Of a stretch of 64,000 nucleotides of DNA, positions 45,393-48,409 are shown piece by piece; within the stretch, counting starts at the first letter, position 1; each line of letters opens with the position of its first letter. The stretch covers positions 11,552,655-11,616,654 of the forward strand of contig NC_068985.1 of assembly GCF_001194135.2 (NCBI RefSeq), given 5' to 3'. Position numbers and translations under genes: made by a program. The notes under the pieces are model-generated. The model searched no databases, was not told the origin of the DNA, and worked only from the letters and a program-made list of their open reading frames with translations. Source of the stretch: Octopus bimaculoides (lineage: Eukaryota).

Positions 45393-45833
45393 ATAAGTTC
45401 TTTTATGTATGTATGTGCAGATTTGTATGTTATATGTATGTAATCTTATGCATATAGTTACATATCTAGACATACTATTATATATTTAAATGCTAAACTT
45501 CTGAAGAGTTTTAAAGATATTTACAGTTCCAGTGATGGATTTGATCTGTAGTCTTCGAATTAGTTTTCTCCTTTCTGGTTTTGAGAAGCCTAATTTTTCA
45601 AGATTGGTATTTAGGCAGTGTGTTGCATATCCCAGGGCTCCACTAATTACAGGTATAAACCTGAACTTGTAATCTGGATAGAGTAACTGCAGATTTCTCA
45701 ATAGCCCAGCATAGGTGTTCTCTTTTTCAGTGATCTTCAGATTTATGTTTACATCTGCTGGGCATCTAAATTCTACAGCTGTACCCAATATCTCTTCTTT
45801 ATTCCAAATTATTATATCAGGTCTGTTTTGCTT
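45393..45833 (-). mobile_element. RLE retrotransposon fragment (R4/Dong-like), CATA family, copy 3, with an open 115-aa endonuclease C-terminus
   Basis: 45833-45486 translates to KQNRPDIIIWNKEEILGTAVEFRCPADVNINLKITEKENTYAGLLRNLQLLYPDYKFRFIPVISGALG..QKFSI*. This has the RPD..E..P.D..K..K..Y PD-(D/E)xK pattern and the IPV..GALG motif. The first 35 aa of the called ORF are only microsatellite. Confidence 0.92.
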
Positions 45834-45836
45834 ATG

Positions 45837-45870
<34 letters not shown>

Positions 45871-45890
45871 TGTATGTATGTATGTATGCA

Positions 45891-45927
<37 letters not shown>

Positions 45928-45934
45928 ACGTATG

Positions 45935-46258
45935 TCATTGTTCAGTTTTATTTCAAGATTGCTTGACAATAGAGAAAGAGCCGGTTTCTAACCTAGATTT
46001 AAAGCTCCTTCAGATATTTTTGTTTGTATGTATGTATATATGTATGTGTGTGTAGATTTGTATCTTTTGCTTTATGCATGTACACTCATGCATATAGTTG
46101 AATATCTAGACATGCTTCTATATATTTGAATGCTAAACTTTTGGAAAGTTTTACAGATCTTTACAGTTCCAGTGATAGATTGGATCTGTAGTCTTCGAAT
46201 AAGTTTTCTTGCTGGTTTTGAGAAGCCTAATTTCTCAAGATTAGTATCTAAGCAGTGT
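45935..46258 (-). mobile_element. RLE retrotransposon 3' end, CATA family, copy 2
   Basis: Minus strand HCLDTNLEKLGFSKP..RRLQIQSITGTVKICKTFQKFSI. The 3' UTR ends AATCTTGAAATAAAACTGAACAATGA, then a CATA/CA tail at 45934-45835. (CATA)-like repeats lie at the 5' junction (46261-46291). Confidence 0.9.
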
Positions 46259-48409
46259 ATCTATGTATGCAAGTAAGTATGTATGTATGTACGTATCTAT
46301 CTATCTATGTCTGTATGTATGTGTGTATGTGTATTTATGTGTATGCATATGTATGTATGGGTGTATGTATGTGTGTAGGTAGACATGGATGTACATTTCG
46401 AGATATGATAGATAACTAAGCAAAGAGTTAAAACAATTTCTGCTAATGATACATACATCCATATAATGTATGCTTTTGTATGTGTGTGTAATATGTGTGT
46501 ATGTGTGTGTATGAGCGTGCGTGTGTAGTTGTGTGTTTGGAAGTTCGGATGTAGAAGCAAGAAAACAAAAATATGCAATATTTATGGTGAATTGGAACCT
46601 GAAGTTTCGCGGTCATTGCTCTTCACGTAACTAATTTCTAATGAGAAAGTCTTGTATTTATGGCAAAATGATTTGTAGCGACTCTCAGTAGAATTGCATA
46701 TAACAATATAAGAATACATGCATACCTATACATGTGTATGTATAACATTATTTATATATATATGTACACACATAATCATATATGTGTGTGTGTATTTGTG
46801 TGTGTCTCTCTGGCTCTGTGTATATATATGTTGTGTAAGCATATTGTTTGTATCACATTAAATCTCGATTCTGTACGATCTCAGTATTTGACTGATGCTG
46901 GCAAATTGCCATAATCGATCGCAGGAGCGTCGCACAAAATGCTTTACGTTTTTTTCTTTGTTTGTTTTTTATGGTTGTTTGTGTTCTGATTTTAAGTATA
47001 TACCTTTGTTTTGCTTTTTTTTCCAGTTGGATAAAAGAAATTATAAATCCTGTTTGGGATGTGAGTTGGCGTTATTATTAAATTTGACAAAAATATATTG
47101 CTTTACTGTGTGTTTCTGTTCCGGAATCTTGCTGTCTGAGGTCACGTGTAGGTGGGTTAAATATGTCTCTATCAAAATAACAAATGCTTTCTCAGAAAAA
47201 TACACGAAGGAAGGTAACAAGAAATCTCTTTTGTAATATTGTACGGAAATACCTGGCAAATTTTTTAACAATCGCGTGTCATCAGAGATCAGTTATCGAG
47301 CTCAGATGGTTTCACTGATAACTGTTTGGTTTATCGAACCCGGAAAGTTGAAGGATGAAATCGATGTGGGCAAACTCTTTTACGTACTGCAAATTGCAAA
47401 TAAAACCAGGACATTTTTGCCCGATACACATTTCATTCTACCCTTATCCGCATGAATGGGAATTGTGTCTACCTTAGGCATATTGTCAACGAAACTGAAG
47501 AGAACTTTAATAGATACGACCGATCTTATAGTTTAGAGGTACTTTGCTTTCTTAATCCCAGGGAGATCAGAAAAGAAACTGACTTCGGTGGGATTTGAAC
47601 TTTAAATGAAAAGAGTCGGAAGAAATACGGCGAGAAATTTTTGTCTGACACTGTGACGATTCTTGCAATGTTCACTCGTGTTTGAAGAAGATGGCGGATA
47701 AAAAGCACGACTCCACCTTCAAGAACTTAACTCAAAAAGACAAACAGTCTAATTAGATACTGTGTGGTATTATATTTAATGCGCTACCGATCCCACCATT
47801 CCTTGGTACATTCATATATATTTCTAACATGCAGTCACAGATATTGGGAATGTACCAGTCGACAACGTAGTCACAAGTAACTAATGAGGCACTCGATTCA
47901 TAGTTTTCTCATTAGTCATACACAAACATTCTGGTATACTTTCCACTATTTTACATTCAGAGTTCAAATCCTTCGAAAGTCCATATTACTTTGCAGCATT
48001 CCTGCGTCGATAAATAAACAACCCTTCACGTATTTGGAGCAATTCTCCTCTCCCTCCGTCTGCCTTATTGTCTCTCTCCCCATCTCTACTTCTGACATTC
48101 AGAACCAGCAATGCTGAGCGTTTTAAAGGTTTTTGACGGCAACTGGGAACTGTTTCATGATCCCACGAAATGGAAGAGGATTCAGCAGGAGATATTAAAT
48201 AACTTCTAATATACAACATGCTACAAAAACCGTTCTAATAACAAATTAGTGCCGGGTGTTAAGAAACCGGTGCGTTATATCGCACAAAACAACTTTACAG
48301 ATAAACTGATGAAGAAATAAATTTTTCAGCAATGTGGTACCATGTTCAATCTCAAACTGAATGCCACCTTAGAAAGAGATCATCTATTATAAGATTTTAA
48401 ATCTCATAC

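What the first reader, a model, noticed from the sequence alone, without database searches (positions are those of the whole stretch)
45393..46291. Candidate (CATA)n-microsatellite-specific RLE retrotransposon family
Seen: three independent copies of one RLE element (5651-6061, 45935-46258, 45393-45833) have three different 5' truncation points, yet each 5' junction abuts CATA repeats. Both intact 3' ends finish ..AATGA and run into (CATA)n. Established: R2/R4/NeSL-type elements use a C-terminal PD-(D/E)xK endonuclease for sequence-specific insertion, and Dong (R4 clade) targets (TAA)n. Inference: this is a Dong relative that has switched to a TACA/CATA tetranucleotide target. A self-made tail alone would not explain CATA on the 5' side of truncated copies. 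I do not recall this specificity being described, but cannot check. An endonuclease with a new target specificity would be of interest.
Basis: partly seen in the sequence, partly recalled or inferred. Interest (0 to 1): 0.75.

Follow-up and report, generated by a model that had tools for sequence, protein, structure and literature searches.

The report
CATA-microsatellite-targeting RLE retrotransposon in octopus
The window holds three dead, front-truncated copies of an octopus jumping gene (an R2-type LINE with a restriction-like endonuclease) that sit inside (CATA)n microsatellites on both sides, a pattern shared by cephalopod and unidentified relatives, so this lineage most likely inserts specifically into CATA repeats: a new target for a known kind of element.

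Summary
Three copies of one non-LTR element lie at 5651-6061 (+), 45931-46258 (-) and 45404-45833 (-). They have three different 5' truncation points, and each 5' junction abuts a sense-strand (CATA)n array. The two intact 3' ends finish AATGA and run into (CATA)n.

One caveat: the array 5' of copy C is also the tail of copy B, so these two junctions are not independent.

A fourth copy, in Octopus vulgaris, has CATA only on its 5' side. CATA arrays cover about 1% of positions here, so chance is unlikely.

The remnant ORF encodes a PD..E..K domain. The model of its closest relative best matches the R2 endonuclease (TM 0.6-0.72).

Relatives, two of them full-length, carry (CATA)n at both ends or in head-to-tail tandems. 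One is from Argonauta; the others are from unidentified ENA metagenome assemblies. Sister lineages sit in (AATA)n or (TTAC)n/(GTAA)n.

Best reading, at 0.8 confidence: a CATA-microsatellite-specific RLE LINE. It works like Dong, which targets (TAA)n. The specificity is a property of an old, widespread lineage, not a recent octopus switch.

Not tested: Dong/R4 clade membership, empty sites, and which domain sets the target. I found no paper describing this target. I rate it a new variant of a known kind, of moderate interest.

The parts
5597..5650 (+). (CA)n/(CATA)n array directly 5' of copy A (perfect CATA run at 5629-5654, overlapping the first 4 nt of the element by microhomology ATAC). Presumed upstream half of the target microsatellite.
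   Evidence: Sequence; array list; junction alignment.
5651..6061 (+). Copy A, 5'-truncated. ORF remnant at 5651-5821 (the last ~56 codons of the RLE protein, with one in-frame stop). 3' UTR with an internal CATA-rich stretch (about 5868-5955). Terminal ~105-bp unit at 5956-6061 ending GAATAATGA.
6062..6116 (+). (CATA)n array directly 3' of copy A, starting in phase |CATA.
45404..45833 (-). Copy C, the longest. Open ORF remnant at 45486-45833 encoding NRPDIIIW..AVEF..CPADVN..EKENTY..GALGY..stop. Putative catalytic residues: D at 45816-45818, E at 45771-45773, K at 45723-45725. The 3' UTR ends in a short CATA run (45404-45416) and has no recognisable terminal 105-bp unit.
45834..45930 (-). (CATA)n-(CA)n array that is both the 3' tail of copy B and the 5' flank of copy C (head-to-tail tandem).
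45931..46258 (-). Copy B, the most 5'-truncated. ORF remnant of ~43 codons, internal CATA stretch (46025-46047), and terminal 3' unit ending GAACAATGA (reverse complement of 45931-45939).
46259..46372 (-). Degenerate (CATA)n-rich array 5' of copy B (best run 46262-46291, more at 46348-46372).

Best explanation
The three window copies are old, dead, 5'-truncated insertions of a non-LTR retrotransposon of the R2 supergroup. It has a single ORF with a reverse transcriptase, a CCHC motif and a C-terminal restriction-like (PD-(D/E)xK) endonuclease, and no APE domain. The lineage integrates by target-primed reverse transcription into pre-existing (CATA)n microsatellites, always with CATA on the element's sense strand.

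Inferred steps:
1. The protein recognises the CATA duplex. Which domain does this is unknown; a candidate is the conserved N-terminal three-helix, Myb-like module.
2. The RLE nicks the bottom strand at a fixed phase, predicted TATG^TATG, because every 3' junction reads element|CATA.
3. The freed TATG-3'OH primes cDNA synthesis on the RNA 3' end, possibly helped by pairing with a read-through (CAUA)n tail.
4. The 5' end is joined to the upstream half of the array through 1-5 nt of microhomology. This gives variable truncation points that all abut CATA.

Later insertions into the tail or array of earlier copies give head-to-tail tandems such as B-(CATA)n-C.

Shown: the anatomy, non-random two-sided CATA flanks, the endonuclease fold, and conservation of the pattern in relatives. 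Inferred: the order of events, the nick site and the specificity determinant.
For: Octopus copies:
- All four 5'-truncated copies abut a sense-strand CATA array at different truncation points. The background is about 1% per oriented position.
- The O. vulgaris copy (L001 10150-10579) has (CCAT)n(CATA)3 at its 5' junction, but its 3' end AATAATGA is followed by ctgacatatata with no CATA tail. CATA is therefore not simply a tail the element brings with it.
- Most CATA arrays in the window have no element next to them, so arrays pre-exist as potential targets.

Relatives:
- Two full-length relatives of the same subclade have CATA at both ends. L008 has (CATA)17 + 5' UTR ... 3' UTR + (CATA)n. L009 has (TA)n(CATA)n + 5' UTR ... 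+ (CATA)n.
- The intact Argonauta hians copy has ACATACATATATAT.. upstream and CATACACACACACACATTCATAC downstream.
- In L004 and L007 a (CATA)n array follows the 3' end, and a second, 5'-truncated copy abuts that array.
- All (CATA)n arrays in L007 are on the element strand.
- Nine of ten 3' ends join the array in the phase |CATA. In four of them the preceding base is G or C, which fixes the phase.
- A sister lineage shows the same two-sided pattern with a different repeat: L006 has a 2.2-kb (AATA)n array 5' and (AATA/AATT)n 3', followed by the next copy.

Protein:
- The RLE identity is supported. P66, D67, D88 and K98 of P0001 are nearly invariant or invariant in 69 sequences; E82 is my own reading of the motif (D/E in the consensus).
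- The AlphaFold model has pLDDT 89, and its best PDB matches are R2Tg, R2Pm and R2Bm (TMq 0.60-0.72, E down to 7e-7).
- Full-length relatives have RVT_1 plus a weak zf-RVT match and no APE domain. R2 proteins are the best solved homologues of the RT.

Precedent: Dong (RLE) inserts in (TAA)n, HERO and Togen families insert in other microsatellites, and APE-type Waldo inserts in (ACAY)n (PMC7998251, PMC4640811, PMC3812793).
Against: - No empty (pre-insertion) site was seen.
- The sample is small: four octopus copies, one of which shares its array with another, plus about eight junctions in relatives from unidentified hosts.
- Copy B's 5' array is degenerate; its last 12 nt match CATA only about 9/12.
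- One 3' end (O. vulgaris) lacks downstream CATA. On this model the insertion would have to be at the very edge of a three-unit array.
- In L003 a related full-length element has (TTAC)n upstream but the complementary (GTAA)n downstream. This does not fit a simple one-array insertion.
- L008, L009 and L011 are short-read contigs of multi-copy elements, so their ends may be collapsed consensus.
- Reverse transcriptases of this group can jump templates, which could create tandem copies joined by a tail without target choice.
Confidence: 0.8

Rival explanations
1. Self-made tail only. The element synthesises or carries a (CATA)n 3' tail, as many LINEs carry non-poly(A) repeats, and inserts without sequence preference. 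CATA at 5' junctions comes from the tails of neighbouring older copies, from template jumps of the RT onto a second RNA's tail during one integration event, or from chance in a microsatellite-rich genome.
For: - LINE 3' tails made of short repeats, including (CATA)n, are known (PMC3747384, table cited).
- C's 5' array is B's tail. The L004 and L007 5' arrays are likewise tails of an upstream copy.
- The constant |CATA phase at 3' junctions would also arise from a templated tail.
- Simple repeats make up 7.45% of the O. vulgaris genome.
Against: - Copies A, B and the O. vulgaris copy have no element upstream of their 5' arrays.
- The O. vulgaris 5' array is a compound (CCAT)n(CATA)3, which is not the element's tail type, and that copy has no 3' tail at all.
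- The chance rate is about 1% per junction.
- Preferential insertion next to earlier tails is itself CATA targeting.
Confidence: 0.12
2. Secondary association. Insertion is random, but copies survive preferentially in, or are later invaded by, growing microsatellites. Alternatively, recombination or slippage between the element's internal CATA stretch and nearby arrays deletes element sequence, so that truncated ends come to abut CATA.
For: - The 3' UTR contains an internal CATA-rich stretch of variable length: 62, 23, about 35 and 13 bp in the four copies. Array dynamics therefore do act on these copies.
- Passive accumulation near CA repeats has been proposed for Drosophila Waldo-A/B (PMC3812793).
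Against: - The truncation points lie in the ORF, where there is no CATA to recombine with.
- The array strand always matches the element strand.
- Full-length copies also start right after CATA.
- A sister lineage shows the same geometry with (AATA)n.
Confidence: 0.05
3. Assembly artefact. In this gap-rich draft (25 N runs), repeats and microsatellites were mis-joined, creating false element/array junctions.
For: The window is 12% N. An N run (4849-5512) lies 140 bp upstream of copy A.
Against: - All junctions lie in continuous sequence.
- The same architecture is seen in a chromosome-level O. vulgaris assembly, in an Argonauta assembly and in long-read-style metagenome contigs.
Confidence: 0.02

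Closest known systems
Dong (Bombyx mori) and Dong-like elements, R4 clade
   Same: - RLE-type LINE with one ORF (RT, CCHC, PD-(D/E)xK endonuclease) and no N-terminal zinc fingers.
- Copies are embedded in a microsatellite on both sides.
- 'Dong-R4' is the label repeat annotators give to the abundant RLE LINEs of octopus: 51 families, 93 Mb and 1129 recent insertions in O. vulgaris (PMC13282606). Among molluscs this class is almost confined to cephalopods (PMC10294476).
   Different: [quoted passage not shown] Here it is the tetranucleotide (CATA)n.
- Clade membership by RT phylogeny was not tested.
- No 5' HDV-like ribozyme was detected, whereas Dong and R4 have one (PMC3774820).
- The octopus family has a long 3' UTR with an internal CATA stretch.
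R2 (28S rDNA-specific RLE LINE)
   Same: - R2 proteins are the best solved homologues of the RT (E 3e-28).
- R2 proteins are the best structural matches of the endonuclease domain (TMq 0.60-0.72).
- The presumed TPRT mechanism is the same.
   Different: - R2 targets one site in the 28S gene and has N-terminal zinc-finger/Myb domains.
- The full-length relatives here show no zinc finger at the N-terminus and sit in microsatellites.
Waldo (WaldoAg1/2, WaldoFs1), R1 clade
   Same: Targets (ACAY)n microsatellites, which include ACAT = CATA (PMC3812793).
   Different: Waldo has an APE-type endonuclease and belongs to an unrelated clade. If the present reading is right, this is convergence on the same repeat with a different nuclease.
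Microsatellite-specific HERO families and Togen ((TG)n)
   Same: RLE LINEs with microsatellite targets outside the R4 clade (PMC4640811).
   Different: - Their targets differ: (TG)n for Togen. The HERO leech family is recorded only in Repbase Reports, which I could not read.
- HERO remains an untested alternative clade for this element. O. vulgaris also has 14 'Hero' families.

Membership tests
RLE-type (R2 supergroup) non-LTR retrotransposon | C-terminal PD-(D/E)xK restriction-like endonuclease | tested here: met
   - Copy C encodes ..RPD(15)E(16)K.. in an open frame.
- The PD and K positions are conserved across 69 relatives.
- The model of the closest relative (63% identical to copy C) has pLDDT 89 and best matches the R2 proteins (TMq 0.60-0.72).
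RLE-type (R2 supergroup) non-LTR retrotransposon | Reverse transcriptase and CCHC motif upstream of the RLE; no APE domain | tested here: met
   Met in full-length relatives only; the window copies are truncated. RVT_1 scores E 1e-22 to 1e-27, zf-RVT is weak, there is no Exo_endo_phos match, and the motif CRLC..E..H....C..RHD is present.
R4/Dong clade | RT-domain phylogeny groups it with Dong, R4 and Rex6 rather than HERO, NeSL, R2 or CRE | not testable with these tools
   No Dong, R4, Rex6 or HERO reference sequence was retrievable. The protein databases returned unnamed hits. Only literature labels for octopus RLE LINEs are available (PMC13282606, PMC10294476).
R4/Dong clade | N-terminal diverged Myb/SANT-like domain without zinc fingers (PMC7998251) | tested here: inconclusive
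   - A conserved N-terminal block (R..R.Y..W..D..Y..G..R.K.WD..P..K.L..A) is present in five full-length relatives.
- AlphaFold gives three helices at pLDDT about 85.
- Myb/SANT domains are among the top fold hits (TM 0.48-0.52), but all have E >= 1.
- Pfam finds nothing there.
R4/Dong clade | Target is (TAA)n (Dong) or 28S rDNA (R4) | tested here: not met
   The flanks are (CATA)n in the window, O. vulgaris, Argonauta, L004, L005, L007, L008, L009 and L011.
R4/Dong clade | HDV-like self-cleaving ribozyme at the 5' end (PMC3774820) | tested here: inconclusive
   - No Rfam ribozyme match in the 5' UTRs of L008, L009 or L011, even at E <= 10.
- My strict structural descriptor found none.
- The relaxed descriptor is as noisy as shuffled sequence.
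- The window copies lack 5' ends.
Target-sequence-specific (microsatellite-specific) LINE | The same repeat flanks both junctions, in a fixed orientation relative to the element | tested here: met
   - Both sides are CATA for window copies A and B (C at its 5' side and in a short 3' run), L008, L009, and the second copies of L004 and L007.
- The strand always matches the element.
- The 3' junction phase is always |CATA.
- One exception has no 3' array.
Target-sequence-specific (microsatellite-specific) LINE | Junction enrichment over background repeat density | tested here: met
   The sample is small: four of four octopus 5' junctions against about 1% background. A genome-wide test was not possible.
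Target-sequence-specific (microsatellite-specific) LINE | Empty orthologous or allelic sites carry the uninterrupted target | not testable with these tools
The window ORF is not on record in other assemblies. Exact-pattern scans of metagenome and prokaryote collections found nothing.

The most novel reading that the evidence does not exclude
The octopus family is one tip of a large, old clade of RLE LINEs. These are abundant in cephalopods and in several unidentified marine eukaryote assemblies. Different lineages within the clade have re-targeted to different tetranucleotide microsatellites: (CATA)n in most sampled lineages, (AATA)n in one, and (TTAC)n/(GTAA)n in another. They share one RT-RLE chassis at 30-60% identity. 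That would be a natural series of re-programmed DNA-recognition modules in R2-like, TPRT-competent proteins. It would include a convergent solution to the ACAY target of the APE-type Waldo, and none of it appears in the literature I could search.
Probability: 0.4. Interest if true: 0.6.

Novelty: new variant of a known kind. Interest (0 to 1): 0.45.

Why it matters
Site-specific RLE retrotransposons, R2 above all, are now being developed as tools for inserting DNA without double-strand breaks (for example PMC13586686 and PMC13580325, listed). How such proteins change targets is therefore an open and practical question.

A lineage that keeps the R2-like RT-endonuclease core but reads a 4-bp repeat, with sisters reading other 4-bp repeats, would give comparative material for locating the specificity determinant. 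It would also help explain how 'Dong-R4' elements reached about 93 Mb in octopus genomes without landing in genes, and how they shape the (CATA)n landscape there.

For TE biology alone this is an incremental addition to a known list of microsatellite-targeting LINEs. It may already be recorded in Repbase, which I could not consult.

Tried and rejected
- Looking up the window's 150-aa ORF in other assemblies found nothing.
- Exact scans for a 20-nt conserved element motif in JGI metagenomes and prokaryote genomes found nothing.
- The protein searches returned few octopus proteins: only P0002 was usable, and P0013 and P0018 exist but were not returned by the permitted search. A large sample of octopus copies could not be gathered.
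- No named Dong, R4, Rex6 or HERO sequences came back, so no clade tree could be built.
- Pfam finds nothing in the 114-aa window peptide.
- Rfam hits in the region are sub-threshold mir-297, mir-466 and similar matches to the microsatellites themselves. I rejected them as low-complexity artefacts.
- The consensus fold of the terminal 3' unit from three copies is weak (-7.5 kcal/mol, one compensatory pair), so no claim is made.
- The HDV-like ribozyme search was negative or uninformative.
- L010, the contig of the closest relative P0001, ends at the stop codon and shows no 3' end.
- Literature searches for CATA, ACAT, TACA or ATAC targets of non-LTR elements found no description.
- I considered whether copy C carries a decayed terminal unit. 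The local alignment scores no better than shuffles.
- I considered that most CATA arrays are element tails. I rejected this because most arrays in the window have no element 3' end upstream.
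Full report
**What is there**

The window is AT-rich (34.7% G+C) draft sequence with 25 N runs. The only named protein match is to Octopus vulgaris, so the source is an octopus or a close relative.

BLASTN of the three claimed copies against the window confirms them and finds no others:
- A at 5651-6061 (+)
- B at 45931-46258 (-)
- C at 45404-45833 (-)

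A and C are 88% identical, and B is 83-84% identical to each. Similarity ends at the element boundaries.

A four-way alignment with a copy from O. vulgaris chromosome OX597824.1 (L001 10150-10579) shows one shared architecture:
- the 3' end of an ORF
- about 100 bp of 3' UTR
- a CATA-rich stretch of variable length
- a conserved terminal unit of about 105 bp ending (A/C)AATGA

The four copies start at four different points in the ORF. A carries an in-frame stop, B a small deletion, and C is open to the natural stop. All are old, dead, 5'-truncated insertions.

C has no significant match to the terminal unit.

**The flanks**

In element sense, the 5' junction of A follows 26 bp of perfect CATA. 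C's follows a 57-bp CATA run. B's follows a degenerate CATA array. The O. vulgaris copy's follows (CCAT)n(CATA)3. Each junction shows 1-5 nt that could belong to either the repeat or the element, as expected if the cDNA end was joined to a CATA top strand by microhomology.

A and B end ..AATGA|CATACATA. The O. vulgaris copy ends ..AATGA|ctgacatatata, with no tail.

The array between B and C serves as both B's tail and C's 5' flank, so the window gives two independent 5' junctions, not three. The O. vulgaris copy restores a third.

A CATA-type 12-mer within 6 bp upstream on a given strand is found at about 1% of positions in the window and 0.3-0.6% in L001. Chance is therefore not a credible explanation.

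About 31 CATA arrays lie in 56 kb. Most have no element beside them, so the arrays are not simply element tails.

**What the element is**

The ORF remnant of C reads NRPDIIIWNKEEILGTAVEFRCPADVN..EKENTY..GALGY. An exhaustive profile-free search with the closest relative (P0001, 63% identical) found 1,910 relatives. They include full-length proteins of about 1,135 aa (P0155, P0160, P0169-P0173).

These full-length proteins have:
- an RVT_1 reverse transcriptase
- a weak zf-RVT match at a CRLC..E..H....C motif
- then RHD..EYWWN..RPD..E..K
- no APE domain

The best solved homologues of the RT are R2 proteins. An AlphaFold model of the 176-aa C-terminal domain (pLDDT 89) best matches the R2 proteins of zebra finch, big-headed turtle and silkmoth (TMq 0.60-0.72). 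Other PD-(D/E)xK nucleases follow. The RLE assignment is therefore sound.

The N-terminus of full-length relatives has a conserved block predicted as three helices. Its nearest folds include Myb/SANT domains, but without statistical support. This is consistent with, but does not prove, the Myb-like domain reported for R4/Dong (PMC7998251).

I could not obtain Dong, R4, Rex6 or HERO sequences, so clade membership is untested. Repeat annotators call the dominant octopus RLE LINEs 'Dong-R4': 51 families and 93 Mb, with 1,129 insertions of about 4.2 kb at no more than 2% divergence (PMC13282606). 'Hero' families also exist there.

**Relatives tell the same story**

- The intact Argonauta hians copy (L002 10097-13516) has ACATACATATATAT.. 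upstream and CATACACACACACACATTCATAC directly after its short 3' UTR.
- Two full-length relatives of the octopus subclade are bounded by CATA at both ends: L008 and L009.
- L011 ends in CATA.
- More distant relatives, at 35-43% identity in the RLE domain, also end in long (CATA)n arrays (L004, L005, L007). In L004 and L007 the array is followed immediately by a second, 5'-truncated copy.
- In L007 every CATA array lies on the element strand.
- Nine of ten 3' ends join the array in the phase |CATA.
- A 30%-identical lineage (L006) shows the same geometry with (AATA)n, including a 2.2-kb array at the 5' junction.
- L003 shows (TTAC)n and (GTAA)n.
- On a crude neighbour-joining tree of the RLE domain, CATA-associated members fall on both main branches.

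The CATA association is therefore a property of an old lineage, not a recent change in this genome.

**Mechanism and rivals**

The best-supported reading is target-specific TPRT into (CATA)n, analogous to Dong in (TAA)n.

A tail-only model explains the 3' arrays and the tandems. It does not explain three things: 5' arrays with no upstream copy, the compound (CCAT)n(CATA)3 at the O. vulgaris junction, and that copy's missing tail.

Secondary association through array growth or recombination does not explain truncation points inside the ORF, or the fixed strand.

Assembly error is excluded by the same architecture in independent assemblies.

What sets the specificity is open. The candidates are the RLE, the N-terminal module, and pairing of an RNA tail with the nicked repeat.

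**Comparison and novelty**

Microsatellite-specific LINEs are established:
- Dong (RLE, (TAA)n)
- HERO families and Togen (RLE, other repeats)
- Waldo (APE, (ACAY)n), Mino, Kibi and Koshi

These are described in PMC3812793, PMC4640811 and PMC7998251.

I found no paper that assigns a CATA target to an RLE element, or that describes target choice for cephalopod 'Dong-R4' elements. Repbase and Dfam could not be consulted.

I rate it a new variant of a known kind, of moderate interest. Interest would be higher if the clade-wide retargeting series holds.

**Limits**

- The hosts of the ENA contigs are unknown.

Noticed in passing
window 5868-5955, 46025-46047, 45404-45416; L001 10425-10470: The octopus family carries a CATA-rich stretch inside its 3' UTR. 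Its length varies between copies (about 62, 23, 13 and 35 bp). It separates the post-stop UTR from the conserved terminal ~105-bp unit. Copy C stops at this stretch. It could be a former tail, with the terminal unit later captured by read-through of a nested short copy.
   Followed up: partly
L003 830-1110 and 4800-4865: In an unidentified ENA contig, two related RLE elements are separated by about 270 bp of (TTAC)n. The second, full-length element ends in the complementary repeat (GTAA)n, and its stop codon lies in the repeat. Opposite-strand repeats on the two sides do not fit a simple single-array insertion.
   Followed up: no
L006 5844-8065 and 10735-11120: A 30%-identical RLE lineage sits between a 2.2-kb (AATA)n/(TAAA)n array and an (AATA)n/(AATT)n array. 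Another truncated copy follows directly after. This is the same geometry as the CATA lineage, with a different tetranucleotide.
   Followed up: partly
L007 1560-3300: Several short non-coding repeats are each bounded by sense-strand (CATA)n arrays in the same 2.2-Mb contig that carries the CATA-lineage LINE. One repeat includes a tRNA-like segment in reverse orientation at about 2290-2365. They may be non-autonomous passengers or other occupants of CATA arrays.
   Followed up: no
L003 1-830 and L008 3850-4440: Some relatives have long 3' UTRs (600-770 bp) built from three or four tandem units of about 90-180 bp. A GGACGTGT-containing motif recurs in the L003 3' UTR units and in the 5' UTRs of L003 element 2 and of L008.
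   Followed up: no
window 44700-46800: Rfam gives sub-threshold matches to mir-297, mir-466, mir-1277 and mir-3149 on the TG/TGTA-rich arrays (best 44 bits against a gathering score of 90). These are low-complexity look-alikes, not miRNA genes.
   Followed up: yes
L004 4900-6400: The second, 5'-truncated copy in this locus is split by about 1.5 kb of unrelated sequence between RT residues of about 641. It also seems to carry an internal deletion (about aa 300 to 521).
   Followed up: no
window 1-64000: CATA-type arrays of 12 bp or more occur about 31 times in 56 kb, on both strands. They are often compound with (CA)n, (TA)n or (GATA)n. Only five of them touch the element copies.
   Followed up: yes
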